A DNA stretch of 64,000 bases from Macrostomum lignano (GCA_002269645.1 NIVC01003363.1:1-64000); one strand, 5' to 3'; numbered from the stretch's first letter, positions 8,448 to 64,000 are shown. A program made the numbers and translations. Notes: generated from the letters alone by a model not told the origin.

Positions 8448-10867
8448 CTGCAAGGTCCGGGGTTCGAGTCCTAGAACATTAAATTGTAATCAAACTGGCA
8501 ATCGTTTTCTCAATTTCTCTGTAAATGTATAATTTTCCCTTTTCCAATGTATATTTACTGTTTATTATATTTTCATTTGTAAAGAATAGTTTTTATTTAA
8601 ATTGACATTTTGCATGCACATTGGCAAGTCATGGTTGTCTATGTGACTTAATTAATGTTTTGGCAAATTCAAAAAGGTAGAAGTATACTATATGTAGCAT
8701 ATATTGCAACTATAGGAGTTTTTGGCTTTCAAGATATTGTGATTTAAAAAAAAACAAATTCAGAAGCTGCAATTAAAACAAAGAATAGATTATCTAAGTT
8801 GCCAACAAGTAATTGAAGTTATTCATTGCAAATTTAGAAATCATCATATAAAATAGGCAAAAACTAAAGCATATATTAGTAATATCTTTGTGACACCATA
8901 TCAATAATGCCCTAAGTAGCTTATATAGCAATTGGCTTGCCAACTTAGCATTTAGCAACCTATGCCAATGAGACATGCCAGGTTTTCTATATCAGGTCAC
9001 AGCTGAAATTAAAACCTACACCATATAGTAGAGATGGAATAAAAATTTGGTATTCATATTTGGTATTTGGAAAGTAGGTTATTTTTTGCTATTTAATTCA
9101 TCATTGGATTCATTTAAATTTTTAACAAATATAAGAATAAAACAAAAGCAACTCCAATATTTTAAATATTTAAGTTTGTATAAGAAAAATATTAATATAT
9201 TAGTATTAGATTTGGTAGATAGCATCTACAAATGGGCTAGTGAATTAGTTTAATAGTGAGATAGTGCACTTTTCTATAATACTGTATATTCTTCTAGTAT
9301 ATTTTTGCTATGATAACAACCTATCATTTCTTAGAAAATATAATATTCAAATGTCTGCTAAAATATCTTTGTGTTAATGTTGTGATACAAAATAATTTTC
9401 TGCAAATAAATTTGTTTTAAATAGACCAGTCAACTAGTATAAATAGAAGCCCCAAGTGGGCCAAGGAAGGCAACTTGCAGAGACCTGCAAACCTGCAAAC
9501 TTGCAAGAACTTAGCTGATGGCTAAGTTTTCACTAAATCTATACGTATTTTTTATTTGGCTTCTTCAATTATTAAGAATTAAAAGCCCCAATTTGGGAGA
9601 GTTAAGATATGCTAAAAAGTAAGAATTGCCTTAGAGCAGTAGATCACCATTGGGCAATAGATTGCCTCAGAGCAGTAAAATGCCTTAGAGCAATAAATTG
9701 CCTCAGGGCAGTATAAGGCTAAGAAGCTGTGACCCTCTGATCCCAGGAATATCTAGGACTAAGAGAAGAACCCTTTAAAAGAGTAAAATAGGAGTATAAG
9801 GATAGGGTAGACAGATTTGGCAAATTTTGGCATATTTTTGTTGGTAATAAAAGCCTGTTGGCATAAATTAGTCATATAATCGCTCTTAGCCAATAGTGAC
9901 TTGCATAGGCCTATGTATATTGCCAATAGAAATGGCCAAGTGATTCCCAAGGTTGCGCATGTATGCCTTGGCAGATATATCTAGATTGGCCTATAGGATT
10001 TTTTTATTATAGCTAATTTGGTCAGAATTCTATTTAAAAGACTAGCCCCCCTAAAATGCCCATGGCAAATAAAATAAAAATATACTATAATTCTAGTTCT
10101 AGTTTATAGTCTGGGCCTATGACTGTACTTATATCCAAAAAGTTCATAGTTTCCTAGTAAATAATAAAATATTATAAAATAATATAAAATAATAAAAATG
10201 AAGGATTACAGGCCTATGCAGCTATGCTATAATCTAACCTGCCAATTTCATAATCTGGTAAAATACAAGAAAGAAAACTAGATAAATTGCAGTTAAAAAC
10301 CTATATAAATGTATTTATACTCATGTATATATTCATGTACACCTATATATATATATATATATATATATAAGTATTTCAATTATTTTTTTAATGAACTAGG
10401 CCCTATATAAGCCTGCACTGCCTCACATGCTTAAATCAATGCACAAGTTGGGGCAGAAGTCTTATTCAGCAAAGTAACTTGGGTTTGCATCAATTACTAC
10501 AACCAAAATTCCACAAACTGCCGTGGAAATAAGCAGGTATCATATCATTGACATGACAGACACCAATTACACAGGACAGTGCCATGGTGACATTTTTGTT
10601 ATTGGCGTGGGACTGTGGAAAAAAACATTGATACACATTTATTCATCATTATTTTAATAACCTACGCCTACATTGGTAATGGTATCCATCCATATACTAA
10701 GAATTATTGATCTTTTACAAGAAGTTTATAGACAGTTTGCATTACAAACAGACAGTGATGTCACCGATTCGAATGAGGCTGACGCTGTCACCGACTGACA
10801 AAATTAGACACGGAAGCATCTGAACTTGTCACCGATCTGACCAGTAGGCCTAACCGAATAAAGCATA

Positions 10868-40200: not shown

Positions 40201-43200
40201 TTTTCGTTTCTTAGAAAATCTTTTACAGGTGACTTCAGCGCCAGGGTTTACATTTTACACATCAGATACTCGGCTTTTCGTTTCTTAGAAAATCTTTTAC
40301 AGGTGACTTCAGCGCCAGGGTTTACATTTTAAACATCAGATACTCGGCTTTTCGTTTCTTAGAAAATCTTTTACAGGTGACTTCAGCGCCAAGGTTTACA
40401 TTTTACACATCAGATACTCGGCTTTTCGTTTCTTAGAAAATATTTTACATGTGACTTCAGCGCCAAGGTTTACATTTTAAACATCAGATACTCGGCTTTT
40501 CGTTTCTTAGAAAATCTTTTACAGGAGACTTCAGCGCCAGGGTTTACATTTTACACATCAGATACTCGGCTTTTCGTTTCTTAGAAAATCTTTTACAGGT
40601 GACTTCAGCGCCAAGGTTTACATTTTACACATCAGATACTCGGCTTTTCGTTTCTTAGAAAATCTTTTACAGGTGACTTCAGCGCCAAGGTTACTTCCAG
40701 CGCTGAGGCAATTCTCCATTCCGCTGGCTCCTGAGCACATACAAACGCGACAATATTGTAAGCAGGCACGCACTCATGCTGTACGACACGCTCACGCTCA
40801 ATCAGGGTGTACAGTGGCCCCGACTTTCTTATAGCCGGGCGTGTACACTCTCTGTGCGACAACTTCCTCATGGGTTTACCGCTGAGCTGCTGTGCCCCAA
40901 TCAAACAGGACAATGGACAAACAGGATAATTCAAATAGAGTTTAAGAATGACAGCTTACATTCTCTTTAATGTAGCTCCTGTCAGCCTCCGGAATGGTGA
41001 GCCACTGTTGGCCCAGCTGCATCCTGACTGAGCTATTCTTGGAGTACAGCTGGTTCTTGAGCTGCAGGCCGGCCTGCATCCTGACGAAGGTGGTGTTGTT
41101 AACATCGCGCAGGATCTCGGACAGCTGGCGTAGGAACTGCACCTAGAACAGGGAGGCCCACCGGGGTTTTATCCAGCTGCTAATGGCAGGATAATTAGCA
41201 CGGCTGCACACACCAATAACTCACCAGATTCTGGTTGGCTGCATCTTGCAGAAAGTTGAGCGCAGTCTCGCGCTGGGCCTTGTCTACAACAGTGGTTGAA
41301 TGAGAAACTTAGGAATTGCATACAAATTAAATGTAATTAGCCCATTGACCTTTTAATACAATTGAGAACCATACAAGCAATTATTAGCAAATACTACTTA
41401 CTACTTACCATGCCTGTATTATTGTTTTAATGTGTCTTGTTTTGCACACAAAAATGTAGGACCCTAAAGTTCTGGCATATAGATGGTACACACAGAGGCC
41501 AGAGCAATAGCAAAGAATTACTTTGACTACTCCTAACCATGGTATTAATAGACTAAAACTGAAAGATTATCTACTTTCCTCTAAATTATCTTACAAACCA
41601 ATAGTAGGAACCTTAGCGATATTTTGAAAGCCTATAAATGTTAAAAATTTCATTTTAAATATATATATTTTTATTTTATACTCATGGATATTATAAGCAA
41701 AGACATAATAAGCCAAAAGTTATATATATTTAAAAAGAGAATTTTTTAAGTTTTCTAATTTTTCAAATTTAGTCCTCTCATTAATTGCTTCATAAAGTAT
41801 AGTCAAAATGATGAAATCAATTAAACATATCCAATTATACAAAAAATTCTAGCATTCAAATTAATGCTTATTAATCTTGATATACCATGTTGATATACCA
41901 AATTGATATTTCAAAATCGGCACATTATACCAACTTTGATTGACTAATACATAAACTTTAGAAAAGAGGTTTGCAAAACACAATTTAAATTTGTTTTGAT
42001 TTTTTAAAATATTTTTTAATTCTTTTGCTTATATAGTTAACCATGCTAAATGTGGTCCAATTTGTTGCAGGGGTTGGTATCTTTGAACATGACAATCTAT
42101 ACTAGTTTTAGACATAATACTATTAACAAAGACATTGTTAAGTGGCTCCCCACCCTATTCTCATCCCTATCCTTATTTCCCAGTAGACAAATAGTTTTAA
42201 AAGAAAAAGGTTTTTTGTCCACTTAGCAAATGAGCTGTCAGCAGACAAAAGAACTAGAAACCTGTTCAACACAATGAGGTAATTCAAGTTGAAGTTACAA
42301 CACAATTATGATACAATTTTTAGTAGCATTAGAATTCAGCTAATCAGTTTTTTCTCTAGCATTCTTGCAATGTATTTCAAGTCAACAAGTTTGCTTGGCC
42401 TTTGCAAAAAAGCATGTTTTTTTAATATTTATTCCCTTTAACATTGAGCAATTTCTTAGCCAAGACCAGGCGCTGCGGAACAAGTTTTTGCCAGGGGGGC
42501 AAGACCAAGTTTCCAAAACTTGGTCTTGGTCTTGGAAAGACCAAGTTTCCAAGCCCAGACCCTGTCTTGGACAATGACCAAAAATTTGAGCAAAATTATG
42601 CTATTGAATGGTATTTGAGGGGGCAATGCCCCCCTGCAACTCAATGTCAGGGGGGCAGCTGCCCCCCCCCTGCCCCCCCTGTTCTGTGGCGCCTGGCCAA
42701 GACACATGTACTATCATAGGAAAATTTTTAATTGAATGGTGCAAGTTTGAAGAATTTTAGGTGGGGTCAAGGCCAAACCTATCTATATGTAAACTGCCTT
42801 TTATGCAATATTAAGGTGCCTAACACTGCCAATAAGGTAGAGTTTATCTATTATTAGGCTCTGTGATGACATGCTATCCAATATACCCTGCTTTGTGACT
42901 TTGCTTGCAAGGCTATATAATTTTTGGTTGTTGTTGTTATTATTTAAAATATTGGTTAAGCCATTTTTTTAAGCCATTTTGACCCTCTTATTATCTTAGT
43001 GCCTTGGCCATTATTGTTGTAAATTTAAAAAGCTGCTTTCTTATCTTGGTTCTTAGTTGGATCCAAAAACTGAGCTTATAGGCCTAATGTCAAATCTATA
43101 AATAGTAAGTGCAATTTTAATTAAGTTATAAATGTATTATAAAATTATCTGGCACAAACATATTACTACCTTCCCTTTGCCATTTTAGACTTTAAAGCTT

Positions 43201-45931: not shown

Positions 45932-45977
<46 letters not shown>

Positions 45978-46153
45978 ATCCCCCTTCCTCGCTGGCACGG
46001 CCGGGTTGGGCGACGGGTAGCGGTGTCGGGGTTCGGGTACTAGACTGCCCAGGGCTTACGAGCTCGATCGGCGACCCCGAGGCGTACGGACACTTCGGGG
46101 GGAGGTCAAGGTTGAGAAGTCGAGAGAGAGGGGAGGGGCGGCTGTGGGCGGGC

Positions 46154-46350
46154 GGCCACTCGACAGCCTGGTGAGTCAAGGAAGAGAGAGAGGGCTGCGG
46201 GCGGTCGGCCACTCGACAGCCTGGTGAGTCAAGGAAAAGAGAGAGGGCTGTGGGCGGGCGGCCACTCGACAGCCTGGTGAGTCAAGGAAGAGAGAGAGGG
46301 CTGCGGGCGGTCGGCCACTCGACAGCCTGGTGAGTCAAGGAAAAGAGAGA
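46154..46350. repeat. 53-bp x4 repeat inside the LTR (also 54065-54260), each with TGAGTCA / CTG|GTGAGT
   Basis: GGCCACTCGACAGCCTGGTGAGTCAAGGAA.. repeated 4 times in each LTR. Confidence 0.9.
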
Positions 46351-46460
46351 GTGAGAGAGAGAGAGAGATCAGGAGAGCGACCCCGAGGAACACAGGCAAT
46401 TGTCTCGACAGCTTACCGGGCCGGGTCGATTATAGCACTCATACACGGGAAGGCCGATCG

Positions 46461-46506
46461 ATTGCAATAAATTGAGTCTTCGCAGTAAGAGACCGTCTCT
46501 ACGGTT
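46461..46506 (-). other. Spliced-leader-like 46-mer in the 3' LTR
   Basis: Identical copy of 54372-54417. Confidence 0.75.
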
Positions 46507-46936
46507 GATCGCTGGTCACGTTCGTTTATTTATCGCGGTGGGCGCAAATGGGCGCAGGCACGGTGAGAAAAGGGGCGGGGTCTGAGCGTCGCCTTAAATA
46601 ACGAGTAAAAAGGGGCAGGGGCGCAAACAAGGGGGGGAGAAAGGGCTTAAACAATGGAGCTGATTGACAGCTGATTGGCTGCGGCGAGGGGAGGGTGGAA
46701 GCGCGCACGGCCAGGGAGAGGGAGAGAGAGCAGAGGCCCAGCCAATCAGCACGGCTAGCCAAAGGGCTAAACAGCCAAGGCGAGAGAGAGAGAGAAAGAG
46801 AGCAGAGGCTCAGCCAAAGGGCTCATAGCTCCAGACTGGCTTGAGCCGGGGGGGGGGTAACAATAATCAACTACCAAAGTCAACAACTATCAAAGTGCAC
46901 TTGCACCAGGGGAGCACTGTGACACAGGTCACAACA

Positions 46937-46948
46937 CCCTCCCCCCTA
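46937..46948 (-). other. Polypurine tract
   Basis: AGGGGGGAGGG on the element strand, immediately before the 3' LTR. Confidence 0.9.
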
Positions 46949-47039
46949 AAAAAAAGAAAACGACGCGCTTTGACTGAATGAAAATGAAAAAAAAATGTAA
47001 TGAAATGAAACTGAATGAAAGAGACCAAGAGTGTCAGGC

Positions 47040-47501
47040 AGCGGCCGAGAGCGCAGGACAGGGGCCGAGGATGTCGGACAGGCCGAGAACACCGGGCACG
47101 GCCGAGAATGCCGGACTGTGGCCGAAAACGCCGGGCATGGCCGAGAATGCCGGACAGCGACCGAGAATGCCGGGCAGCGGCCGAGAACGCCTGGCATGGC
47201 CGAGAATGCCGGACAGCGGCCGCGAATGCCGGGCAGCGACCGAGAACGCCGGGCATGGCCGAGAACGCCGGGCATGGCCGAGAGTGCCGGACAGCGGCCG
47301 AGAATGCCGGGCAGCGGCCGAGAATGCCGGGCAGCGACCGAGAACGCCGGGCATGGCCGAGAGTGCCGGACAGCGGCCGAGAATGCCGGGCAGCGGCCGA
47401 GAATGCCGGGCATGGCCGAGAACGCCGGGCATGGCCGAGAGTGCCGGACAGCGGCCGAGAATGCCGGGCAGCGGCCGAGAGCGCCGGGCATGGCCGAGAG
47501 T
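47040..47501. repeat. GC-rich ~19-20-bp tandem array (GGCCGAGAATGCCGGGCAGC variants) in the element's 3' untranslated region
   Basis: Directly visible, roughly 20+ variant units. Confidence 0.9.
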
Positions 47502-47632
47502 GTTCCCCGCCCTTCCTTCGGGGCCGCTCCCAGTGCCAAACAGAGGGATCACAACGACGATCAGAGGAGAGATGGGATGAAATGAAGGAGTGAAGGTCTC
47601 TTGCCCGCCCTGGCATCCTGCCCCAGAACCCC

Positions 47633-48514
47633 CTAGACCGCCACCTCCGCCGCCCGGCGCAACAACCCCAACACGCGTCCTCCGTCGATTAGTTCAAACT
47701 GAGGGATCGCAACACTCATGACGAACCGAGTGCTTCGCTTGAAGGCAGGCCGCCGCCAGACACGCCGAGCATGACCCCGACACTTGGCGCTGATGTCACG
47801 GAGAATGAACTTGACAGTCTGAGCCAAAAGCTCGGCGATTTCGCGTCGATGATCCAGCCGCTCGCTGCCGCACAGTCCCACCATTTCAGTCAAAAGCCGG
47901 AACATCGCAGCTGGACTCCCCGACAACAAAGCGTGCCGAAGCTCCGACCGGATTCGAGCTCTTCGCTGCGTTGCCTCCCCGCTCCAGGTGTATTCCACCT
48001 CGGTACTCGGCTCGCTCCTCATCAGCCACGCTGGCGACTCCCGTTGGTCGATGACGAGCTCCGGTTCGTCTTCTGACATCGAAGTTTCGCCGTCGGATTC
48101 ATTCAAGAGCTCTTCTTCCTCTGACTGCGTGATTTCACAGCAGCTCTGAGCAGTCTCCTCGCCGCCGCAACCACCACGCTCGCTTCCTTCCGACTCCCTG
48201 TCCTCGTCTGACTCTTCTGTTTCGTCTTCAATCGTTACGACAAACTCCTCCGGGACGCACATCCCATCCGGCGGGACAAAATACCGGGCGCACTCGAGCG
48301 GGTTGCTAACGGCATCCTGCCCGAACCGGTCGTACAGCGCTCGTCGAAACGGACACAGCAGGACCGCACTCGCATGCTGCAGCCTCTGGAAATTCTCCGT
48401 TCCACCGGGTCCACACTTGTCGGGGTGCCGTCGCAGGCTCTCACGGCGGTACGCACGTCGCAGCTCCTCCTCCGTCGCGAAGGGGCTGACACCAAACTCG
48501 GCGTAGAGGTCCAT
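47633..48514 (-). CDS. ORF3 of the LTR element: DnaJ/Hsp40 J-domain protein (293 aa from the ATG at 48514), acidic linker, unknown helical/basic C-terminal domain
   Basis: DLYAEFGVSPFATEEELRRAYRRESLRRHPDK..GTENFQRLQHASAVL....RRALYDRFG is a complete J-domain with HPD (48427-48419); GGCATGG Kozak context; lies between the pol stop and the PPT on the same strand. Confidence 0.88.
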   Translation of the reverse strand: MDLYAEFGVSPFATEEELRRAYRRESLRRHPDKCGPGGTENFQRLQHASAVLLCPFRRALYDRFGQDAVSNPLECARYFVPPDGMCVPEEFVVTIEDETEESDEDRESEGSERGGCGGEETAQSCCEITQSEEEELLNESDGETSMSEDEPELVIDQRESPAWLMRSEPSTEVEYTWSGEATQRRARIRSELRHALLSGSPAAMFRLLTEMVGLCGSERLDHRREIAELLAQTVKFILRDISAKCRGHARRVWRRPAFKRSTRFVMSVAIPQFELIDGGRVLGLLRRAAEVAV

Positions 48515-48715
48515 GCCCGGAAAGCAGTGCCTGCAACAACCACGACTCACTTTTGAGAGCAGGGCAATGGTTCCTTCGAGCCTCTTTGGGGCGCCGATCC
48601 TTCATCCCTGATGGCAGGGTTGGGCAGGTGGGACCTCCACTGACGGGCCTTAAGAGGGGAAATATATATTTTTGTTTGTGAAGCAGAGGCAATAACACGA
48701 GCCCAGTTTTCAATA

Positions 48716-48908
48716 ACGCGGGTGATGACGCAGACGATGCTTCGAACCAAATGTTGATGACGCAGGTGATGACGCGGATGATGCTTCGAACCAAATGTTG
48801 ATGACGCAGGTGATGACGCGGATGATGCTTCGAACCAAATGTTGATGACGCAGGTGATGACGCGGATGATGCTTCGAACCAATTATTTATGACGCAGGAG
48901 ATGACGCG
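48716..48908. repeat. 44-bp tandem array (~4 copies) rich in TGACG between pol and ORF3
   Basis: GATGACGCAGGTGATGACGCGGATGATGCTTCGAACCAAATGTT units. Confidence 0.9.
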
Positions 48909-48935
48909 ACATTGCGCACGCACTCACGTCCGCTC

Positions 48936-51900
48936 TTAATAATAAACGGGCGTTCCATAACGCTGCGGAACCCTTCGATCCCTCTGGGGTCGACCTTCGA
49001 TGACTTCAACTGGCGCTTCCGGCTGCGGCTGCACTCCTGGCTGCTGCACATCCATTGGTTCTCCCTCCTCTCGAACCCGCCCGGAATGTCGCCACCATCG
49101 CTCCTCATCCTCATCGTCCGATTCCTGCGAGTCCTCCCTGACGGATTCCGTCTCTTGAGCAGGACCTGGGTGGTACCTCCTTGGTGCAGGACGCCGAGGG
49201 CCACCGGTGCCGTCGACCGGGTACTTCCGGTACCGAGGCAGGAGGTTGTTAAAGTGCACCACCTTGATCGGCTTCCGTCGACCTTCCTGTCGAATCCTAT
49301 AGCGCGTCTCCGACAGCTTCTCGAGAACTACGGCAGGTCCGGTCCAGGGTGAGTGGAGCTTCGCTTTGGCACCGGCCTTCAACACGGGGTTGTAGACGAA
49401 CACCTCGTCGCCAGCCACGAATTCTCGACCCTTCACCTTCCGGTCGTACCAGTCTTTCTGCACTCGTTGATATGACGTTATTCTCTCACGCACCACCCGA
49501 TGGGCTTCCACGAGCGTCTCCCGCAGGTTCTGGACTTCCTCGCAGTACGGTTCGATGTCCAGTGGGCGCGCCACTCCCAAGTCAACTGGCAGAGACATCT
49601 CGCGACCATGCAGAAGGAAGAAGGGTGAGTAGCCGGTGCCGCGGTGCACACTGGAGCGATACGCCATGAGCGCCGGGGCAACGAATTCGTCCCACCGCCT
49701 CTGATCCGGCTCCTTCACCAGGTGCGCCCGGATCACTGCAGTCAGCGTCTTATTGAAGCTTTCCACTTGGCCGTTTCCAGAGGGGTGATAGGCGGTCGTA
49801 CGCGTCTTTCGGATATTCAGACTTTCGCACAGCTGGCCGATCAATTGCGACTCGAAATTGGCTCCCTGATCCGAGTGGATTGTTCCTGGGGCTCCGTAGT
49901 GACAGACCCACTCCTCGAGCATTGCCCTTGCACAGGTGCTGGCCGTCTGATCTGGCACCGGTACTGCCACTGGCCACTTACTGAACGCGTCCTGCATCGT
50001 CAGTATGTATTTGTTGCCTCGGACGCTGGTTGGCAGTGGTCCAATCAAATCCACCATCACTCTTTCAAACACATGGCTGCTGGGAATCGGCTCCAATGGG
50101 GCCTTCCGCCGCATCCCGGGCTTGCTCCGGTTACAGTCGTCACACCTTCGCACAAACTCCTCGACCTCTCGCTTCAAGCCGGGTCTCCAGAATCGGTTCC
50201 TGACTTTCTCCAGAGTCTTTGCTACGCCGAAGTGTCCACCTCCTGGTCCAGAGTGCAGCGTCTGCAGAGCGTCGGGGATCAATTTCTTCGGGAGAACAGC
50301 CCGCGGTGGGTGACGTCCCAGATCCTTGATGACGAGGGTGTTGTCCACAATTTCCAGCCGAGGCTTTTGTGCCCAGATGGCTCGGGTCGTTGGTGACGCA
50401 CCCCGAGGTGGCTCTTCGTTTGCTCGGCCGGCGTGCATCGACTGGTAAACTGGAGCGATGTCGTTGTCCACAGCTTGTGCTGCTGCCAGCTCATCTCGGC
50501 TGAGCAACCCGAGCAGCGTCGTTACCCTGACCCCGGGGAGGTCATCAGTCCGGCACGACGGGCAGTTATCCATTTCGGGATGTCGTCGCGTCGGCTTGCG
50601 TGACAGCGCGTCCGCATTCTGATGACGCGCCCCTGGCCGATGCTCCACTGCGAAGTCGAATGGCGCCAACCTCTCCATCCACCGAGCCAACTGGCCTTCC
50701 GGCTGCCTCATACTTCGGAGCCACTGCAGACTTGCGTGGTCGGTGCGCACCCGGAACCTCCGGCCAAGTAGATAGTACCGGAACCTCTCTGCGAATGTCA
50801 CCAGCGCCAGGAGCTCGATTCGTGTCGTGCAATAGTTGAATTCGGCCCCTTGCAGACGCCGACTCCCGTACGCAATAACCCGCTCTGACCCGTCTTCTTG
50901 TACCTGCGACAAGACTGCTCCGAGACCCTGTCGGGTACTTCCATCGGTATCCAAGATGAACTCACCAGCCGTGGGGTCGAAGTTCGGGTAGGCCATCACG
51001 CGGCAACCGGTCAATTCTTCTTTCAGCTTTTTGAAGGCCTCATCGTGTTCCTCTCTCCAACTGAACGGCTTGTCTTTCTTTGTCAGATCAAAAAGTGGTG
51101 CAGCGACTATCGAGAATTCTGGTATGAAGTTTCGGTAGTAACCAGCCAGACCCAGGAACGACTGAAGGTCTTTTGCATTTCTTGGAATGCTCCAGTCACG
51201 GACTTCCTTGATCTTCTCCGGGTCGACATCGATTCCGTCCTTTGACACGACGTGGCCAAGGAATTTGACCTCATCGGCCAGGAATCTGCACTTAGATGGC
51301 TTTAGCCTCAAGTTGGCTGCGCGCAGGCGCTGGAATACCGCCTCGAGATTCGTTAGATGCTCGCTGACAGTTCGGGACCAAATGATGATATCGTCGATGT
51401 AGACGAGCGCCATTTTCCACAGAAGGTCGTGTAGTACCATATTCATCAACCTTGTGAATGTCGCCGGCGCATTGGTCAATCCGAAGGGCAGCACCTTGAA
51501 CGCGAATTGCCCCCGATGCGGAATGACAAAAGCAGTCTTTTCTTGATCCTCCCTTTTGACCTTAACTTGCCAATAGCCGGAGCAAAGGTCGAGCGTCGAA
51601 AATACAGCCGCACCTCCGAGCGCTTCAAGTGCGTCATCGACACGCGGGATTGCTATGGCGTCCTTGACAGTTCGTTGATTCAACTCTCTGTAGTCGACAC
51701 ACAGTCGCAGTTCCCCATTCTTCTTACGGACACAGACCACTGGCGAACTCCACGGCGATTGGGTCGGTTCAATCATCTTCGTTGCCAAAAGCTCGTCGAT
51801 TTGTCGGTCGACTTCGCCGCGCCAATGTGGCGGTAGCCGTCGCGGAGGCTGTTTTACGGCTGTTCCGGTGGTCTCAATTTCATGCTGCACGATGTCCGTC

Positions 51901-52913
51901 GTCCCGAGGCGCGCTGTACTCTCTGCGAAAACATCTGCGTATCGATTCACCAATCTTAGGAAACTCGCTTTGTCTGCCCCCGTGAGCTGCTTGGAGCCGT
52001 GCTGGTTCAGTGCCGCCTCTGGGTCCCATGGATCGCAGCTGGGTCGTAAAACCGACGCTTGCTCTTCGATGCTGGCTACCAGAACCTCTTGAGCCGGATC
52101 TGATGGTCGAAACCAGCCGATGACAGCTCCCTTCCGCAGCCGCAGCTCGGAGTCCGTGACATTCGCGAAGTGAACTGGTAGGGTGTTGCCCTGCTGGATG
52201 AGGCAGACGCTCCTGGCTAGCATTGGTCTCTCATCGCTCTTCAGTTTTTCGTCTGGCTCGGCGACGCCGAGCACTCCGGAATTCTGTGTCGCTGTTCTCC
52301 GAATCCTGGCTGAGACGGTCCGTTCGTGATTGGCCGGAATGATCAAGTTTTCGTTCAGGTACAACCGGCAGACGACTGGTTTGTGCTTGGTCTCTCGGAT
52401 TGGCACACGTGAACCGTTCACGCGGAAAACTCCTCCGGCGAAATCGATTTGGCACCGGTGGCGGCGTAAGAAGTCGGTGCCTAGCAACAGTTCGTAGCCG
52501 ACCCCTTGGACCACCGCAATTGGCGTCTGTAAAGTTTCTGATCCGAACTGTAGGGGAAGCGACGCGCATCCTAACACATTCATGGGAGTTCCGTTCGCTG
52601 AGATCAGGTGGGTTTCCGAAGGGCTGAGTTCAACTCGAACCGACTTGCTCAACTGCCGCCAGGTCCTCTCGTTCACCAGCGACATGACCGAGCCCGAATC
52701 CAACAGACACGGCAACTCAATCTCGCCAATTTTTACCGACACGTAGATTGACACGGGATTAAAAGCTGTTGCAGGTTGATCTCTATCTCTTGAGCAGTCC
52801 GCCGGACATCCTGCTGCACGTCGCTCCGGGGCTGCATCTTCGTCTCGGGTTGGGGCCTCTACTGTCTCGGCGGAACTCCCTCGCCCCTGCGGAAGTTCCC
52901 CTTGCCGTTTCCC
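48936..52913 (-). CDS. pol: Pol polyprotein (PR-RT-RNaseH-INT), -1 frame to gag, open from the slippery site; no chromodomain
   Basis: LLDSGS, LCVDYRELN, PFGLTNAPATF, YIDD, ILDTDGS, H..GHFG..C..C, DLIGP, SDQG, HPSGNGQVE, GPY/F-like tail; no stops in 1272+ aa. Confidence 0.96.
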   Translation of the reverse strand, partial: GKRQGELPQGRGSSAETVEAPTRDEDAAPERRAAGCPADCSRDRDQPATAFNPVSIYVSVKIGEIELPCLLDSGSVMSLVNERTWRQLSKSVRVELSPSETHLISANGTPMNVLGCASLPLQFGSETLQTPIAVVQGVGYELLLGTDFLRRHRCQIDFAGGVFRVNGSRVPIRETKHKPVVCRLYLNENLIIPANHERTVSARIRRTATQNSGVLGVAEPDEKLKSDERPMLARSVCLIQQGNTLPVHFANVTDSELRLRKGAVIGWFRPSDPAQEVLVASIEEQASVLRPSCDPWDPEAALNQHGSKQLTGADKASFLRLVNRYADVFAESTARLGTTDIVQHEIETTGTAVKQPPRRLPPHWRGEVDRQIDELLATKMIEPTQSPWSSPVVCVRKKNGELRLCVDYRELNQRTVKDAIAIPRVDDALEALGGAAVFSTLDLCSGYWQVKVKREDQEKTAFVIPHRGQFAFKVLPFGLTNAPATFTRLMNMVLHDLLWKMALVYIDDIIIWSRTVSEHLTNLEAVFQRLRAANLRLKPSKCRFLADEVKFLGHVVSKDGIDVDPEKIKEVRDWSIPRNAKDLQSFLGLAGYYRNFIPEFSIVAAPLFDLTKKDKPFSWREEHDEAFKKLKEELTGCRVMAYPNFDPTAGEFILDTDGSTRQGLGAVLSQVQEDGSERVIAYGSRRLQGAEFNYCTTRIELLALVTFAERFRYYLLGRRFRVRTDHASLQWLRSMRQPEGQLARWMERLAPFDFAVEHRPGARHQNADALSRKPTRRHPEMDNCPSCRTDDLPGVRVTTLLGLLSRDELAAAQAVDNDIAPVYQSMHAGRANEEPPRGASPTTRAIWAQKPRLEIVDNTLVIKDLGRHPPRAVLPKKLIPDALQTLHSGPGGGHFGVAKTLEKVRNRFWRPGLKREVEEFVRRCDDCNRSKPGMRRKAPLEPIPSSHVFERVMVDLIGPLPTSVRGNKYILTMQDAFSKWPVAVPVPDQTASTCARAMLEEWVCHYGAPGTIHSDQGANFESQLIGQLCESLNIRKTRTTAYHPSGNGQVESFNKTLTAVIRAHLVKEPDQRRWDEFVAPALMAYRSSVHRGTGYSPFFLLHGREMSLPVDLGVARPLDIEPYCEEVQNLRETLVEAHRVVRERITSYQRVQKDWYDRKVKGREFVAGDEVFVYNPVLKAGAKAKLHSPWTGPAVVLEKLSETRYRIRQEGRRKPIKVVHFNNLLPRYRKYPVDGTGGPRRPAPRRYHPGPAQETESVREDSQESDDEDEERWWRHSGRVREEGEPMDVQQPGVQPQPEAPVEVIEGRPQRDRRVPQRYGTPVYY

Positions 52914-53839
52914 TGTTGCTGACGGGTTGGGCAGTTAGTCGCGATGTGCCCTGGCTTGTTGCAGAAGAAGCAGCGAATTCCTCCCGTTCGTCGAGGCTTC
53001 TGATGGTCGCCTTCGTCGGAGTCGGTCGGTCGAGCTGCGGCGCTGCTATGCGGTTCCGCTCTCAGCGACTCGAGCTGAACCACTTTGCCTTGAAGCTGCC
53101 TCACCAGTTTCTTCAACTCCTCGAGCTCTTTGTCCTTTTCTTGGGAGTAGGCTCCATCCTCCCGAGGCACAGATTCCGCCGCGCCGCTCACCACGAAGAC
53201 TCCTCGGTGGCCGCTGCCAGTTGCTCCAGCCGATCTCGGTCCCTTCGCCGCCTTGGACGCCGCCTCGAGCTGCCTCACCGCGCGTTGTGCTGCCACCAGA
53301 CCTTCGGGCTGCTGCAGGTAGAGCTTCTCTCGCTGGAGGTCGGAGAGTCTCACCCCTTGCATGAAGCGATCCTTCGCGAGGTCGTCCTGCAGCTCGGCAG
53401 TTGCCGCCGGGTAGGCACAGCGCACCAGTTCAAGGAGAGCATCTGCGTAGGCCTCCAACGACTCGCCATCCTTCTGATCTCGGGTTTTTAGCTCGACCTT
53501 GCTGTCCTGCTCTGTCCGGTACCGGGAGAAGCGAGCCTCCAACCGGGCGGTGAATCCCTCGTAGTCCAGCGGATCCACAGGATCGTCGGGTCCCGGCAGG
53601 TTCAGATTATCGACCGCAGCGTACGCCGTAGCGAGATCCAGCATGCTCATCAAGTGCTCGCGGCGATGCTCCTCGTCAATCTCGGCGGAGTCGCAATAAG
53701 CGTTGAAAGAGCGCAGCCAGAGTCGAAAATTCATGCTTGACGTGTACTTCACGGGCTTCGGGAGTCTCGGTGGCTGGGCTGGTCCATCCGCTCGCAGACG
53801 CTCGGCTAGCAGCCGAATCAGTTCGTCCACATTCGCCAT
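52859..53839 (-). CDS. gag: Retrotransposon Gag (326 aa) with CCHC zinc knuckle
   Basis: ATG 25 nt after the PBS; CFFCNKPGHIATNC knuckle; Q..GESLEAY..L capsid-like motif. Confidence 0.92.
   Translation of the reverse strand: MANVDELIRLLAERLRADGPAQPPRLPKPVKYTSSMNFRLWLRSFNAYCDSAEIDEEHRREHLMSMLDLATAYAAVDNLNLPGPDDPVDPLDYEGFTARLEARFSRYRTEQDSKVELKTRDQKDGESLEAYADALLELVRCAYPAATAELQDDLAKDRFMQGVRLSDLQREKLYLQQPEGLVAAQRAVRQLEAASKAAKGPRSAGATGSGHRGVFVVSGAAESVPREDGAYSQEKDKELEELKKLVRQLQGKVVQLESLRAEPHSSAAARPTDSDEGDHQKPRRTGGIRCFFCNKPGHIATNCPTRQQQGNGKGNFRRGEGVPPRQ
52874..52913 (-). promoter_or_regulatory. -1 ribosomal frameshift signal (G GGA AAC + 7-nt spacer + 9-bp stem, possible pseudoknot)
   Basis: Heptamer at 52913-52907 is in gag phase; pol is open in the -1 frame; stem GGAACTTCC/GGGAGTTCC; loop GGGGC can pair with a downstream GCCCC. 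Confidence 0.75.
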
Positions 53840-53863
53840 GACAGCTCACAAGCAAACTGAGCA

Positions 53864-53881
53864 GTCCCTGTTCGGGCGCCA
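53864..53881 (-). other. Primer binding site, tRNA-Lys(UUU)
   Basis: TGGCGCCCGAACAGGGAC, 1 nt after the 5' LTR; the canonical 18-nt tRNA-Lys3 PBS. Confidence 0.93.
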
Positions 53882-54371
53882 ATGTTGTATCCCCCTTCCT
53901 CGCTGGCACGGCCGGGTTGGGCGACGGGTAGCGGTGTCGGGGTTCGGGTACTAGACTGCCCAGGGCTTACGAGCTCGATCGGCGACCCCGAGGCGTACGG
54001 ACACTTCGGGGGGAGGTCAAGGTTGAGAAGTCGAGAGAGAGGGGAGGGGCGGCTGTGGGCGGGCGGCCACTCGACAGCCTGGTGAGTCAAGGAAGAGAGA
54101 GAGGGCTGCGGGCGGTCGGCCACTCGACAGCCTGGTGAGTCAAGGAAAAGAGAGAGGGCTGTGGGCGGGCGGCCACTCGACAGCCTGGTGAGTCAAGGAA
54201 GAGAGAGAGGGCTGCGGGCGGTCGGCCACTCGACAGCCTGGTGAGTCAAGGAAAAGAGAGAGTGAGAGAGAGAGAGAGATCAGGAGAGCGACCCCGAGGA
54301 ACACAGGCAATTGTCTCGACAGCTTACCGGGCCGGGTCGATTATAGCACTCATACACGGGAAGGCCGATCG

Positions 54372-54417
54372 ATTGCAATAAATTGAGTCTTCGCAGTAAG
54401 AGACCGTCTCTACGGTT
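54372..54417 (-). other. Spliced-leader-like 46-mer in the 5' LTR
   Basis: AACCGTAGAGACGGTCTCTTACTGCGAAGACTCAATTTATTGCAAT; resembles flatworm SL exons (AACCG start, AACCGT/ACGGT stem, ATTT.TTGCA end) but lacks the terminal ATG. Confidence 0.75.
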
Positions 54418-54435
54418 GATCGCTGGTCACGTTCG

Positions 54436-54444
54436 TTTATTTAT
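54436..54444 (-). promoter_or_regulatory. Overlapping TATA-like (ATAAATA) and poly(A) signal (AATAAA) of the LTR
   Basis: GATAAATAAAC starts ~27 nt upstream of the SL-like sequence; same motif at 46525-46533 in the 3' LTR. Confidence 0.55.
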
Positions 54445-55054
54445 CGCGGTGGGCGCAAATGGGCGCAGGCACGGTGAGAAAAGGGGCGGGGTCTGAGCGT
54501 CGCCTTAAATAACGAGTAAAAAGGGGCAGGGGCGCAAACAAGGGGGGGGAGAAAGGGCTTAAACAATGGAGCTGATTGACAGCTGATTGGCTGCGGCGAG
54601 GGGAGGGTGGAAGCGCGCACGGCCAGGGAGAGGGAGAGAGAGCAGAGGCCCAGCCAATCAGCACGGCTAGCCAAAGGGCTAAACAGCCAAGGCGAGAGAG
54701 AGAGAGAAAGAGAGCAGAGGCTCAGCCAAAGGGCTCATAGCTCCAGACTGGCTTGAGCCGGGGGGGGGGGGTAACAATAATCAACTACCAAAGTCAACAA
54801 CTATCAAAGTGCACTTGCACCAGGGGAGCACTGTGACACAGGTCACAACACATGAATATATACATGAGTATGAATACATTTATATAGGTATTTTAACTGC
54901 AATTTATCTAGTTTTCTTTCTTGTATTTTACCAGATTATGAAATTGGCAGGTTAGATTATAGCATAGCTGCATAGGCCTGTAATCCTTCATTTTTATTAT
55001 TTTATATTATTTTATAATATTTTATTATTTACTAGGAAACTATGAACTTTTTGG

Positions 55055-56603
55055 CAGTGTTGGGCAAGTTACTCAAAAAAAGTAACTTGCGTTACTGTAA
55101 CTTAAGTTACCAATTTTTAAAAAGTAACTTACGTTAGCCTAGTAACTTTAGACAAAAACCTGGTAACTTTTAAGTTACTGTCCGTTACTCACTTCCGTTA
55201 CCCATGTTATTAACAAAATTTTCTGCTTTTTTCACATTGCACATTTTTTCACATTGTTGTTACCGAAATTTGCCATTGGGCATTGGGATTAACCGATTAA
55301 CAGACAGAGACAGGAATTGGCGACACGATGTGAGGCAAGTAGAAGGACCAATGGGCAATGGCAATCAATAATTAAAATTATAAATGATAAAATAAACGAA
55401 TATCAAAAATTCAATAGAGTAAAATAAATAGAACTGTATAAAATGGTCTAGTGTACTGCACAAGGACGACTTAAGTAGAAGGACGGGAAACCTCGTTTCC
55501 TAGAAAAGTTCTGAAGGCACTTTTTCCCGAAAAAATACACTACGGAGATAGGAAGTTTTCATTTTTTCAGCACAAAAATTGTTATTGCGTTTGATAGGAG
55601 GCAGATCCAGTGTTCATCTTTTGATATGTTGTGCCTTTTTTATTGCTCTATCGATATTTTTAAAGCTTTTCGTTCAGAAAATTAGGATTCTATGTTAATT
55701 TTTTATTCTACGTATATTTCCTGTATCTAAAAATCACAAAAATGCATGACACAGCTCCAATATTTGGTTTTATGAACCTATTTTATCATCTCTGTTACAA
55801 ATATTTGCTACACAGTCGGGTAAGAATTATAAAAAAGACTCATGAAGCTAAAGAGCCGAGCCGTGGCATTCTAATGTATTTCAAGCACAAGACACGCGAA
55901 AATATACGTAGAATAAAAAATTAACATAGAATCCTAATTTTCTGAACGAAAAGCTTTATAAATATCGATAGAGCAATAAAAAAGGTACAACATATCAAAA
56001 GATGAACACTGGATCTGCCTCCTATCAAACGCAATAACAATTTTTGTGCTGAAAAAATGAAAACTTCCTATCTCCGTAGTGTATTTTTTCGGGAAAAAGT
56101 GCCTTCAAAACTTTTCTAAGAAACGAGGTTTCCCGTCCTTCTACTTAAGTCGTCCTTGGTACTGCAGTGCCAGTGGAGGGACTTGTGGAGGCTACAGATG
56201 AATTTCTTTCTTTGGTTTTTTGTTTGAATCAAACCTAGAAAATTTTTAGTAACGATCGAAAATGAAAGGCGAAAATATTTTACGGAAATTAACAAAGTAA
56301 AACATGTTTCAAGTATTTCTTCAATAATTAAGCGCAATACCATATGATACTATTACTTAATTTTGAATTTAGGAATGAAAAATGCAAAAACATGTGACAA
56401 CCGGCGTACTAGCTAAGAATTTCAGTTTTAAATTTAAATATGGCGATTGTTGAAAAGTAACTGTAACGGACTTCCGAAATTTGAGTAACTTACCGTTACT
56501 CCGTTACTAAAATAAAAAAGTAACTTGCGTAAGGAACGCTTTACGAAAAAGTAACTTGCGTTACCATTTGCAAGTTACTCGGTAACGGAAGTGCCCAACA
56601 CTG
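55055..56603. mobile_element. Non-autonomous hAT-like DNA transposon (1549 bp), right arm only
   Basis: 12-bp TIR CAGTGTTGGGCA; 8-bp TSD CTTTTTGG (55047-55054, 56604-56611); single copy of the site at 10135-10142 in the left arm; many subterminal GTAAC/GTTAC motifs; no ORF. Confidence 0.92.
55461..56158. mobile_element. Nested foldback MITE (698 bp) with ~260-bp TIRs, possibly P/Galileo-like
   Basis: CAAGGACGAC.. / ..GTCGTCCTTG termini, long near-perfect inverted arms (55461-~55719 vs ~55900-56158), 8-bp TSD GTACTGCA (55453-55460, 56159-56166). Confidence 0.88.
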
Positions 56604-62905: not shown

Positions 62906-64000
62906 GGGCGCTCGGTGCGGACTGCCCGCTTCTCGCGTGGCTCCGATGCGCGTGCGGAATTCGCGTGTAAATAGATTAGCGGTGCAGTTCCTGATTTTCC
63001 CGATTTCATAATTCTTCCAATAAAAATTTGCTGAAGATACGCAAAACTGCAACTGACATGCCAGAAAGCTTTCGCTTTTGTCTTGTACATGTAGCGGCTG
63101 GATAAGTAACCTCTGCCATCATATATACATGTAGCGGCTGGATAAGTAACCTCTGCCATCATATATACATGTAGCGGCTGGATAAGTAACCTCTGCCATC
63201 ATATATACATGTAGCGGCTGGATAAGTAACCTCTGCCATCATATATACATGTAGCGGCTGGATAAGTAACCTCTGCCATCATATATACATGTAGCGGCTG
63301 GATAAGTAACCTCTGCCATCATATATACATGTAGCGGCTGGATAAGTAACCTCTGCCATCATATATACATGTGGCGGCTGGATAAGTAACCTCTGCCATC
63401 ATATATACATGTAGCGGCTGGATAAGTAACCTCTGCCATCATATATACATGTAGCGGCTGGATAAGTAACCTCTGCCATCATATATACATGTGGCGGCTG
63501 GATAAGTAACCTCTGTCATCATATAAACATGTAGCGGCTGGATAAGCGAGATCGCCAGTCACAGATTAGTACGGCGAGGAGCCATTATCGTCCGGATTGA
63601 TCTGCAGGCTAAACAAGACGCGATAGCTGTATAGCTGAGTTAACCAACAATGACCAACCAACTTAAACTAGTTTTAAAAGTGCGGTGTACTAGACTCTCT
63701 CAGTCATACCGTTAGCCTTGGAGTTAAACGGCTGATGTGCGTATGTAGTGGACTCCAAGAATTCGAAGGTTCACCAGATTGGCCATCATGCAGCTTTGAA
63801 CAAAATTGGGCCCCTTGATCTGTGATCAACGTAAGCGGCGGACCAAAGCTGCGCAAACCAAGTGGTTCACAACGGCCATACTGACATGGTGATGGTCAGC
63901 AATTTGGCACAGCCTCAACCCAGCATGTGTACATCTACCATGATGAGTAGGTACACGTAGAGTGGCCCGTAGAGTGGCCGTGGATCTGCGTCGATTATAG

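What the first reader, a model, noticed from the sequence alone, without database searches (positions are those of the whole stretch)
47633..48514. Gypsy retrotransposon carrying a DnaJ (J-domain, HPD) gene in the env position
Seen: an uninterrupted 293-aa ORF on the element strand between the pol stop and the PPT, with a complete J-domain (helices I-IV, intact HPDK), an acidic linker and an unassigned C-terminal domain, inside a young element with near-identical LTRs. Established: J-domains recruit and activate Hsp70 through HPD; polyomavirus T antigens and some other viruses use their own J-domain; retroelement capsid assembly depends on chaperones. Inference: the element encodes its own Hsp70 co-chaperone (for Gag folding/VLP assembly, uncoating, or to counter host silencing). 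I know of no described Gypsy lineage with a J-protein ORF3.
Basis: partly seen in the sequence, partly recalled or inferred. Interest (0 to 1): 0.92.

Follow-up and report, generated by a model that had tools for sequence, protein, structure and literature searches.

The report
Flatworm retrotransposon encoding a J-domain co-chaperone
A young, intact Ty3/Gypsy retrotransposon of the flatworm Macrostomum lignano carries, between pol and its 3' LTR, a third gene for a J-domain (Hsp70 co-chaperone) protein with a new helical domain. The same gene sits in the same place in several very divergent related elements, so it is a long-kept accessory gene and not a stray piece of a host gene.

Summary
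Window 45972-54850 (minus strand) is an 8.9-kb Ty3/Gypsy element with LTRs that differ only in three poly-C run lengths, a PBS, a PPT, and intact gag (CCHC) and pol (PR-RT-RNaseH-IN). A 293-aa ORF3 (47633-48514) matches Pfam DnaJ over the whole profile (E 1.2e-12) and has an HPD motif. The host is Macrostomum lignano.

ORF3 homologues (27-39% identity) lie directly downstream of pol in every related element examined:
- two further M. lignano families;
- two complete gag-pol-ORF3 elements from a brackish-mat metagenome, where ORF3 is followed by a PPT and LTR;
- short contigs from sequencing-run assemblies.

gag and pol have diverged in step (43-46%). Synonymous sites are saturated while pN is 0.32-0.49. 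HPD is present in every intact J domain of the clade.

The protein has three parts: a J domain, a strongly acidic disordered linker, and an Arg-rich five-helix domain with no sequence or fold relative. It has no membrane segment, so it is not an env. A pyrimidine-rich YAG acceptor-like motif precedes the start codon in 7/7 loci, which suggests a spliced or trans-spliced mRNA.

No paper in the library searched describes such a gene. Function, expression and client were not tested.

The parts
45972..54850 (-). Complete Ty3/Gypsy LTR retrotransposon (8879 bp): LTR-PBS-gag-pol-ORF3-PPT-LTR
   Evidence: LTR alignment, ORFs, Pfam domains. It is absent from the otherwise 98-100% identical inverted copy of this region in the left half of the window.
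53883..54850 (-). 5' LTR (968 nt, TGTTGT...ACAACA), containing a 53-bp x4 tandem repeat
45972..46936 (-). 3' LTR (965 nt). It differs from the 5' LTR only in the length of three poly-C runs.
53864..53881 (-). Primer-binding site (18 nt, starts TGG, one base after the 5' LTR). The same 18 nt follow the LTR in metagenome element L005.
   Evidence: The tRNA it pairs with was not identified.
46937..46947 (-). Polypurine tract abutting the 3' LTR. Similar tracts precede the LTR in L004 and L005.
52859..53839 (-). gag, 326 aa, intact, with one CCHC zinc knuckle
   Evidence: zf-CCHC E 3.3e-5; weak PNMA and Retrotrans_gag matches
48936..52934 (-). pol, intact: protease, RT, RNase H, integrase (H2C2, core, p58 C-terminal domain). 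The frame is open from 52934 and overlaps the end of gag by 76 nt in the -1 frame.
   Evidence: 100% identical to M. lignano protein P0002.
48716..48908 (-). 44-bp tandem array (4.4 copies) between the pol stop and ORF3
   Evidence: A 35-bp array sits at the same place in L007.
48531..48536 (-). Splice-acceptor-like TTGCAG after a pyrimidine-rich run, 16 nt upstream of the ORF3 ATG
   Evidence: A YAG lies 0-16 nt upstream of the start codon in 7/7 loci. It fits the [T/C]TNCAG trans-splice acceptor motif reported for M. lignano (PMC8629364). Its use is inferred.
47633..48514 (-). ORF3, 293 aa, intact: J-domain protein
48305..48514 (-). J domain (residues 1-70) with the HPD motif and an Arg-rich helix II
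   Evidence: Pfam DnaJ E 1.2e-12; PDB J domains; AlphaFold pLDDT about 90
47999..48232 (-). Acidic, predicted-disordered linker (residues about 95-172; 37% Asp+Glu, net charge -25)
   Evidence: (pLDDT below 50)
47639..47980 (-). C-terminal Arg-rich five-helix domain (residues 179-292, net charge +11). It is specific to this family, with no known relative.
   Evidence: eight invariant columns in eight sequences; no match
47037..47499 (-). GC-rich tandem array of 20/39-bp period between the ORF3 stop and the PPT
   Evidence: Arrays of 20/32/40-bp period lie at the same place in L007 and short arrays in L002.
54372..54406 (-). Copy of the M. lignano spliced-leader exon inside the 5' LTR (33 of 35 nt). 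The same copy is in the 3' LTR at 46461-46495.
   Evidence: 0 expected by chance. Absent from L007 and L008.
54323..54328 (-). Splice-donor-like GGTAAG in the 5' LTR, downstream of the spliced-leader copy. A second donor-like GTGAGC lies at 53844-53849, just before the gag ATG.
   Evidence: They are candidates only.
10330..10345 (+). Empty insertion site of the element, in the inverted duplicate of this region
   Evidence: The flank matches up to the base next to the 5' LTR. Six bases present here are absent from the filled site, and there is no target-site duplication.

Best explanation
ORF3 is an accessory gene of a clade of flatworm Ty3/Gypsy retrotransposons. It encodes a class-C-type J-domain protein. 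The N-terminal J domain (HPD motif, basic helix II) would dock on host Hsp70 and trigger its ATPase. The Arg-rich five-helix C-terminal domain, tethered by a long acidic disordered linker, would choose the client.

The most likely client is a component of the element's own particle (Gag, the Gag-RNA complex or integrase). Host Hsp70 would then be brought to particle assembly, remodelling or uncoating.

The protein is probably made from a separate mRNA. This mRNA would arise by splicing, or by spliced-leader trans-splicing, at the conserved acceptor-like site just upstream of the start codon.

What is shown: the gene lies inside the element, it is conserved in position and in domain layout across very divergent elements, it is under purifying selection, HPD is retained, and it has no env features.

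What is inferred: Hsp70 stimulation, the identity of the client, and the mode of expression.
For: - Position: ORF3 lies inside an element with nearly identical LTRs, between pol and the PPT. The element is present in one copy of a duplicated region and absent from the other, so it inserted recently and ORF3 moved with it.
- J domain: full-length DnaJ match with HPD. The nearest solved structures are DNAJB1 and Sis1 J domains.
- Same architecture elsewhere: L004 has gag-pol-J ORF-PPT-LTR start. L005 has gag-pol-J ORF, then PPT and LTR. L007 is a second M. lignano family. L001 and L002 have the integrase C-terminus followed by ORF3. P0124 and P0126 are M. lignano gene models joining the integrase C-terminus to the J ORF.
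- Co-divergence: gag 44-46%, pol 43%, ORF3 27-30% overall, J domain 48%, C-terminal domain 35%.
- Selection: pN 0.32-0.49 is below pS 0.66-0.80 in 10 of 10 pairs.
- HPD is present in all intact J domains of the clade.
- Single origin: the motif after helix III occurs only in element-linked proteins among the 150 best hits. The elements with a J domain form one clade in a pol tree.
- The C-terminal domain is confidently folded (pLDDT 89.5, pTM 0.82) and conserved.
- An acceptor-like YAG precedes the ATG in 7 of 7 loci. 30% of M. lignano genes are trans-spliced at such sites (PMC8629364).
Against: - No transcript, peptide or activity data were available.
- The client is a guess. The C-terminal domain has no relative that hints at a partner. 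Its high Arg content would fit RNA binding as well.
- A sister family (L008) keeps an intact 520-aa ORF3 with the C-terminal domain but has lost HPD. Hsp70 stimulation is therefore not indispensable for every lineage.
- dS is saturated, so the dN/dS values are only rough.
- The pol tree is neighbour-joining without support values.
- The structure models rest on only 6-8 sequences.
- The organisms behind the metagenome and sequencing-run contigs are unknown.
- Only 4 of the 7 acceptor-like sites fit the published motif exactly.
- Joining the spliced leader at the window's site would place the leader's AUG out of frame with ORF3 (my own reading).
Confidence: 0.6

Rival explanations
1. ORF3 is an element gene, but it acts on the host and not on the element's own particle. 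It would use Hsp70 to disable, relocate or degrade a host restriction or silencing factor. Alternatively it would draw Hsp70 away from stress-response control, so that element expression follows cellular stress.
For: Viral J domains often act on host targets; this rests on established knowledge of polyomavirus T antigens and was not tested here. M. lignano LTR retrotransposons of several clades exploit the heat-shock response (PMC12801592). The C-terminal domain evolves faster than gag and pol (35% against 43-46% identity), as might be expected for a domain tracking a host target.
Against: No heat-shock element occurs anywhere in the window, including the LTRs. No host partner is indicated by any search. 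Nothing here separates this rival from the main explanation.
Confidence: 0.2
2. The J-like fold serves as a structural or adaptor module that does not need Hsp70. The conserved part that matters is the Arg-rich helical domain, for example as an RNA-binding or packaging factor.
For: The sister family L008 has lost HPD yet keeps an intact ORF and the helical domain, inside an element whose LTRs are 98-100% identical. The C-terminal domain is 17% Arg with net charge +11. There is a weak, sub-threshold hint of an RNA-binding helix (E 0.0055, below the cut-off).
Against: HPD and the basic helix II are kept in every intact J domain of the main clade, although synonymous sites are saturated. The J domain is the best-conserved part of the protein (48% against 35%).
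Confidence: 0.13
3. ORF3 is a passenger. It would be a host DNAJ gene fragment transduced recently by this one element, or a host gene that happens to lie next to the element, with no role for the element.
For: Automatic annotation calls the chimeric gene models simply 'J domain-containing protein'. LTR elements do sometimes transduce host sequence (general knowledge).
Against: The gene lies inside the LTR pair and is missing from the empty site together with the element. Homologues occupy the same position in elements whose pol is only 43-46% identical. pN is below pS. No cellular protein among 1.84 billion representatives shares the C-terminal domain. Eighty generic J-domain loci from metagenomes have no gag, pol or C-terminal domain nearby.
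Confidence: 0.03

Closest known systems
Ty3/mdg4 (Gypsy) LTR retrotransposons of Macrostomum lignano and other flatworms (Mag, CsRN1, Gmr1/Osvaldo clades; PMC12801592)
   Same: LTRs with TG...CA ends, PBS and PPT, gag with CCHC, pol in the order PR-RT-RNaseH-IN, no chromodomain. The closest named pol relatives are M. lignano and trematode elements.
   Different: This element carries a third gene for a J-domain protein. The published survey of 137 M. lignano families does not mention DnaJ, a J domain, a chaperone or an ORF3. I did not test which GyDB clade this element belongs to. The standard CCHC knuckle argues against CsRN1, but that argument rests on memory.
Gypsy-type elements with a third ORF in the env position (errantiviruses and other env-bearing lineages; plant elements with additional ORFs or domains, e.g. 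the orchid Ty3/Gypsy demethylase domain, PMC9289625)
   Same: An extra reading frame lies between pol and the 3' LTR. An acceptor-like site upstream suggests expression from a spliced subgenomic RNA.
   Different: There is no signal peptide or membrane segment (maximum hydropathy 1.09) and no env-like domain. The product looks like a soluble cytosolic or nuclear co-chaperone.
Virus-encoded J-domain proteins (polyomavirus T antigens; DnaJ proteins of giant viruses and phages)
   Same: A mobile genetic parasite encodes its own N-terminal J domain with HPD, fused to an unrelated domain that chooses the target. Structural matches to giant-virus and phage DnaJ proteins cover the J domain.
   Different: No retro-transcribing virus or retroelement appears among the matches. 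No T antigen came back as a hit in the PDB or BFVD searches. The C-terminal domain is unrelated to any of them.
Cellular class C J-domain proteins (a J domain plus a private client-binding domain)
   Same: Same domain logic. The J domain is most like those of DNAJB1 and Sis1 in sequence.
   Different: It lacks the G/F region, the zinc-finger domain and the C-terminal beta-sandwich domains of classes A and B. The helical domain is found only next to retroelement pol.

Membership tests
Ty3/Gypsy (Metaviridae-like) LTR retrotransposon | Two direct LTRs ending TG...CA, with a PBS after the 5' LTR and a PPT before the 3' LTR | tested here: met
Ty3/Gypsy (Metaviridae-like) LTR retrotransposon | pol domain order protease - RT - RNase H - integrase | tested here: met
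   Pfam coordinates along the 1272-aa ORF
Ty3/Gypsy (Metaviridae-like) LTR retrotransposon | gag with a nucleocapsid zinc knuckle | tested here: met
   zf-CCHC E 3.3e-5
Ty3/Gypsy (Metaviridae-like) LTR retrotransposon | Target-site duplication of 4-6 bp | tested here: not met
   Comparing the filled and empty sites shows no duplication, and six bases of the empty site are missing from the filled site. The site borders a (TA)n microsatellite, so a later change cannot be excluded.
J-domain protein (Hsp40/DnaJ superfamily) | J-domain fold of about 70 residues (helices I-IV) | tested here: met
   PF00226 over 63/63 profile positions, E 1.2e-12. The AlphaFold model is helical with pLDDT about 90. 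PDB J domains match.
J-domain protein (Hsp40/DnaJ superfamily) | His-Pro-Asp motif in the loop between helices II and III | tested here: met
   Present in the window ORF3 and in every intact J domain of the clade. Lost in the sister family L008.
J-domain protein (Hsp40/DnaJ superfamily) | Stimulates the ATPase of an Hsp70 partner | not testable with these tools
   This is a biochemical property and is inferred from HPD only.
Class A or class B J-domain proteins (DNAJA/DNAJB) | G/F-rich region, then C-terminal beta-sandwich domains (plus a zinc-finger domain in class A) | tested here: not met
   No DnaJ_C or DnaJ_CXXCXGXG match. The linker is acidic and not G/F-rich. The C-terminal domain is all-helical.
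Retroviral or errantiviral env | Signal peptide, membrane anchor, and fusion or surface glycoprotein domains | tested here: not met
   Maximum 19-residue hydropathy is 1.09. No env family in Pfam. No env-like structure match.
Named Gypsy clade (Mag, CsRN1, Gmr1/Osvaldo, Mdg3) | Placement in an RT phylogeny with GyDB reference elements | not tested
   No reference set was available. Only a neighbour-joining tree of database pol hits was made.

The most novel reading that the evidence does not exclude
A whole clade of flatworm Ty3/Gypsy retrotransposons has long carried its own Hsp70 co-chaperone gene: a J domain fused to a new Arg-rich five-helix client-binding domain. It would be expressed as a separate message through a splice or spliced-leader acceptor. 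This would be the first retroelement lineage known to encode a chaperone-recruiting accessory protein. In this family the LTR has also taken up a copy of the host spliced-leader exon, so the element may imitate, or derive from, trans-spliced host mRNA.
Probability: 0.5. Interest if true: 0.88.

Novelty: new variant of a known kind. Interest (0 to 1): 0.8.

Why it matters
LTR retrotransposons rarely fix new protein-coding genes beyond gag, pol and sometimes env. A conserved J-domain gene would show that a retroelement can bring its own adaptor for the host Hsp70 machine instead of depending on host J-proteins, a strategy previously known from DNA viruses.

It offers a compact natural system for asking which step of a retroelement's cycle is limited by chaperones. 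It adds a new, confidently folded helical domain of unknown partner. It also connects with the recent finding that M. lignano retrotransposons exploit the heat-shock response.

The spliced-leader copy in the LTR and the acceptor-like site before ORF3 raise a further possibility: that trans-splicing, which is common in this animal, is used by or has shaped a retroelement.

Tried and rejected
- Exact-sequence look-up of ORF3 (293 aa and 305 aa) found no record.
- The word-indexed protein search with ORF3 alone gave one weak bacterial DnaJ. With the family alignment it gave one family member plus generic J proteins. The exhaustive representative search was what found the family.
- No other copy of the element lies in the window.
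- No tRNA gene and no Rfam family occur in the window.
- The canonical heat-shock element is absent from the whole window. A direct link with the heat-activated families of PMC12801592 is therefore not supported for this element.
- The search for related loci with the six-sequence alignment failed for lack of a conserved stretch. With a closer three-sequence alignment it returned 80 metagenome loci. All were generic J-domain genes with no C-terminal domain, gag or pol, so they add nothing except a negative control.
- Fold and sequence searches with the C-terminal domain returned only non-significant helical bundles, many of them designed proteins. One sub-threshold Pfam hint (PolyA_pol_RNAbd) was not relied on.
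- A recent host transduction was considered and rejected on divergence, position and the empty site.
- An env function was rejected because the protein has no membrane segment.
- I considered whether the spliced leader's own AUG could start ORF3. It is in frame in L007 but out of frame in the window and in L004, so I dropped the idea.
- Literature searches for a J domain or DnaJ in LTR retrotransposons found nothing relevant. The library does not hold Repbase or most subscription journals.

Full report
**1. The observation**

The window carries, on its minus strand, an uninterrupted ORF at 47633-48514 (293 aa from the ATG). Pfam's DnaJ model matches residues 2-62 over the whole profile (positions 1-63 of 63), with E 1.2e-12 and 48.2 bits against a curated cut-off of 27.8. 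The HPD tripeptide is present and helix II is rich in Arg. Against the sequences of solved structures, only residues 1-70 match. The best matches are the J domains of human Hsp40/DNAJB1 (E 1.4e-12) and yeast Sis1.

**2. The element**

Aligning the two repeat regions shows LTRs of 965 nt (45972-46936) and 968 nt (53883-54850). They start TGTTGT and end ACAACA, and differ only in the length of three poly-C runs.
- An 18-nt primer-binding site starting TGG follows the 5' LTR after one base.
- A polypurine tract abuts the 3' LTR.
- gag (52859-53839, 326 aa) has a CCHC knuckle.
- pol (48936-52934) has protease, RT, RNase H and integrase in the Gypsy order. It overlaps the end of gag by 76 nt in the -1 frame.
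- None of the three genes has an internal stop or frameshift.
- Between pol and ORF3 lies a 44-bp tandem array. Between ORF3 and the PPT lies a GC-rich array of 20/39-bp period.

No target-site duplication is visible.

**3. Host and age**

The pol protein is 100% identical to a Macrostomum lignano protein (P0002). A chimeric UniRef gene model of that species (P0003, A0A1I8H0P8) contains gag, pol and this J ORF.

The window itself is a near-perfect inverted duplication, with arms of roughly 2.4-27 kb and 30-64 kb at 98-100% identity. The left arm holds the empty site of the element (around 10337/10338). The flank matches up to the base next to the 5' LTR. The element is therefore present in one copy of the region and absent from the other. 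Together with the nearly identical LTRs, this marks a very recent insertion that carried ORF3 with it. I cannot tell whether the palindrome is real or an assembly join of two haplotypes.

**4. Relatives of ORF3**

The word-indexed search found almost nothing. The exhaustive search of 1.84 billion representatives found 6225 J-domain proteins, but only a handful that match beyond the J domain.
- P0123, P0125 and P0127 match over their full length at 33-37% identity.
- P0126 is a 3375-aa chimeric model in which the match follows an integrase C-terminus.
- P0124 has an integrase C-terminus followed by a J domain.
- P0178 has the C-terminal domain only.
- P0124 and P0126 are M. lignano entries, named only 'J domain-containing protein'.

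Their genomic contexts:
- L004, from the DNA co-assembly of brackish microbial mats at Etang de Berre (PMC8605020), reads gag, pol, J ORF, and then a PPT with the first bases of an LTR at the contig end.
- L005, from the same assembly, reads gag, pol, J ORF. Its start repeats the ORF3 tail, followed by a PPT, an LTR and the same 18-nt PBS as the window.
- L007, from the M. lignano assembly GCA_002269645.1, holds a second family. Its pol is 46% identical, a 35-bp array follows, then the J ORF at 30% identity, then arrays of 20/32/40-bp period.
- L001 and L002, from sequencing-run assemblies, have an integrase C-terminus followed by ORF3.
- In L002, ORF3 is broken by a frameshift (one apparent). 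An intact 336-aa version of the same family exists (P0282).
- L008 is a third M. lignano family and the sister of the others in the pol tree. Its LTRs are 98-100% identical and it has an intact 520-aa ORF3. This aligns with the family over the J-like and helical domains (hhalign probability 96%, E 4.8e-9). It lacks HPD and the acidic linker, and adds about 265 residues.
- L006 has a pol equally distant (46%), but only about 115 bp lie between the pol stop and the 3' LTR, and it has no ORF3.

In a neighbour-joining pol tree the elements with a J ORF form one clade, L008 is their sister, and L006 falls in the next clade. That tree has no support values.

**5. Is it selected?**

- Between the window, L004 and L005, gag is 44-46% identical and pol 43%. 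ORF3 is 27-30% identical overall, with the J domain at 48% and the helical domain at 35%. ORF3 has diverged along with the rest of the element.
- In all ten pairwise codon comparisons, pN (0.32-0.49) is below pS (0.66-0.80). Synonymous sites are saturated, so the nominal dN/dS of 0.16-0.47 is only rough.
- Five independently sampled reading frames are open despite this saturation.
- HPD is present in every intact J domain of the clade.
- A Cys-Pro-aromatic-(Arg/Trp)-Arg motif after helix III occurs in the window, in L005 and in four of the 150 best hits. All of these are element-linked, and none of the other 146 hits has it. This argues for a single capture.

**6. The protein**

- AlphaFold with the family alignment gives a confident J domain (pLDDT about 90) and a disordered segment at about residues 101-173 (pLDDT below 50).
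- The C-terminal domain is a five-helix bundle. Modelled alone it has pLDDT 89.5 and pTM 0.82.
- The linker has net charge -25. The helical domain has net charge +11 and is 17% Arg. The highest 19-residue hydropathy is 1.09, so there is no membrane segment.
- The helical domain has no significant match in Pfam. A profile search of PDB sequences returned only designed bundles, with E of 0.004 or more. Foldseek gave a best E of 0.43 against the PDB and 0.56 against viral models.
- The full model matches viral proteins only through the J domain. These are giant-virus and phage DnaJ proteins, and no retro-transcribing virus is among them.

The protein therefore has the layout of a class C J-domain protein: a J domain plus a private domain that presumably binds the client.

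**7. Expression**

In all seven loci where the sequence upstream of the start codon can be read, a pyrimidine-rich run ending in YAG lies 0-16 nt before the ATG. Four of the seven, including both M. lignano elements examined (the window and L007), fit the [T/C]TNCAG motif reported for spliced-leader trans-splice acceptors in M. lignano, where 30% of genes are trans-spliced (PMC8629364).

Donor-like sites lie in the 5' LTR (54323-54328) and just before the gag ATG (53844-53849). A separate ORF3 mRNA made by cis- or trans-splicing is the simplest reading. No RNA data were available, so this is inference.

**8. Mechanism and rivals**

Most likely (about 0.6): ORF3 is an element-encoded Hsp70 co-chaperone. 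Its J domain activates host Hsp70 on a client held by the helical domain, and the client is most plausibly a component of the element's own particle.

Rivals:
- It targets a host factor or the stress response (about 0.2). No heat-shock element is present in the window.
- It is a module that does not need Hsp70 (about 0.13). L008 suggests this, but the conservation of HPD in the main clade argues against it.
- It is a passenger fragment of a host gene (about 0.03). Position, divergence and the empty site contradict this.

**9. Comparison with what is known**

- The element is an ordinary Ty3/Gypsy retrotransposon in every tested respect except the missing target-site duplication.
- The survey of 137 M. 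lignano LTR-retrotransposon families does not mention DnaJ, a J domain, a chaperone or an ORF3 (PMC12801592).
- Five literature searches found no retroelement with a J-domain gene.
- Fixation of additional domains in LTR elements is described as rare (PMC9289625).
- The closest functional analogues are virus-encoded J proteins. Polyomavirus T antigens were what I had in mind, and none came back as a hit.

I rate the finding as a new variant of a known kind.

**10. Limits**

- There are no expression or biochemical data.
- The organisms behind the metagenome and sequencing-run contigs are unknown.
- dS is saturated.
- The alignments behind the structure models are shallow.
- The GyDB clade is not assigned.
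- Repbase and much of the subscription literature were not searchable.

Noticed in passing
window 46461-46495 (-) and 54372-54406 (-): Both LTRs contain a copy of the M. lignano spliced-leader exon. The first 33 of its 35 nt, as printed in PMC8629364, are identical, and 0 matches are expected by chance. The copy starts 29 nt after an ATAAATAAA (TATA-like and/or AATAAA signal) and lies about 45 nt upstream of a GGTAAG donor-like site. One possible origin, which is inference only, is reverse transcription of a trans-spliced element RNA. The copy is absent from the two other M. lignano families examined (L007, L008).
   Followed up: partly
window about 2400-27000 versus about 30000-64000: The whole window is a near-perfect inverted duplication (98-100% identity). 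The arms differ by the LTR element, by a second insertion and by minisatellite copy numbers. It could be a real palindrome or an assembly join of two haplotypes or homeologues. Either way it supplies the empty site of the element (around 10337/10338).
   Followed up: partly
window 55055-56603: A 1549-bp element with terminal inverted repeats (starting CAGTGTTGGGCA) and an 8-bp target-site duplication (CCAAAAAG) lies 200 bp from the LTR element. It is absent from the left arm, which has a single CCAAAAAG at about 10137-10144. It looks like a non-autonomous hAT-type transposon and is a second recent insertion.
   Followed up: partly
L008:9943-11505 (M. lignano NIVC01000514.1): A sister Gypsy family has a 520-aa ORF3 in which the J-like domain has lost HPD. 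The acidic linker is missing, the helical domain is kept, and about 265 residues of unknown nature are added. Its LTRs are 98-100% identical.
   Followed up: partly
window 47037-47499 and 48716-48908; L007:5671-5753 and 7093-7508; L002:2108-2422: Tandem arrays flank ORF3 on both sides in the window and in L007. L002 has arrays downstream of ORF3. A GC-rich array of about 20-bp period between ORF3 and the PPT recurs in two families whose unit sequences are not alike. In L007 the ORF3 frame runs on into the array.
   Followed up: no
window 53864-53881; L005:975-992: The 18-nt primer-binding site is identical in the window element and in the metagenome element L005, although their pol proteins are only 43% identical. 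The primer tRNA was not identified.
   Followed up: no
window 5641-6243 (-), 61684-62304 (+), 32649-33308 (-): Host gene fragments lie in the GC-rich blocks: exons similar to DUF4147 (glycerate-kinase type), one in each arm of the palindrome, and an importin-beta-like TPR segment. The background between GC-rich blocks is about 30-35% G+C.
   Followed up: no
window 15478-16887, 20341-22500, 24872-27000, 33595-35900, 36266-36944, 39507-40842, 62966-63666: There are many long GC-rich minisatellites (periods of 74, 40, 28, 25 and 32 bp). They produce long spurious ORFs on both strands.
   Followed up: no
L007:484-1911: In this M. lignano copy, the 1.4 kb upstream of pol, where gag would be expected, is filled by a 30-bp tandem array carrying a long ORF. 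I did not check whether a gag remains.
   Followed up: no
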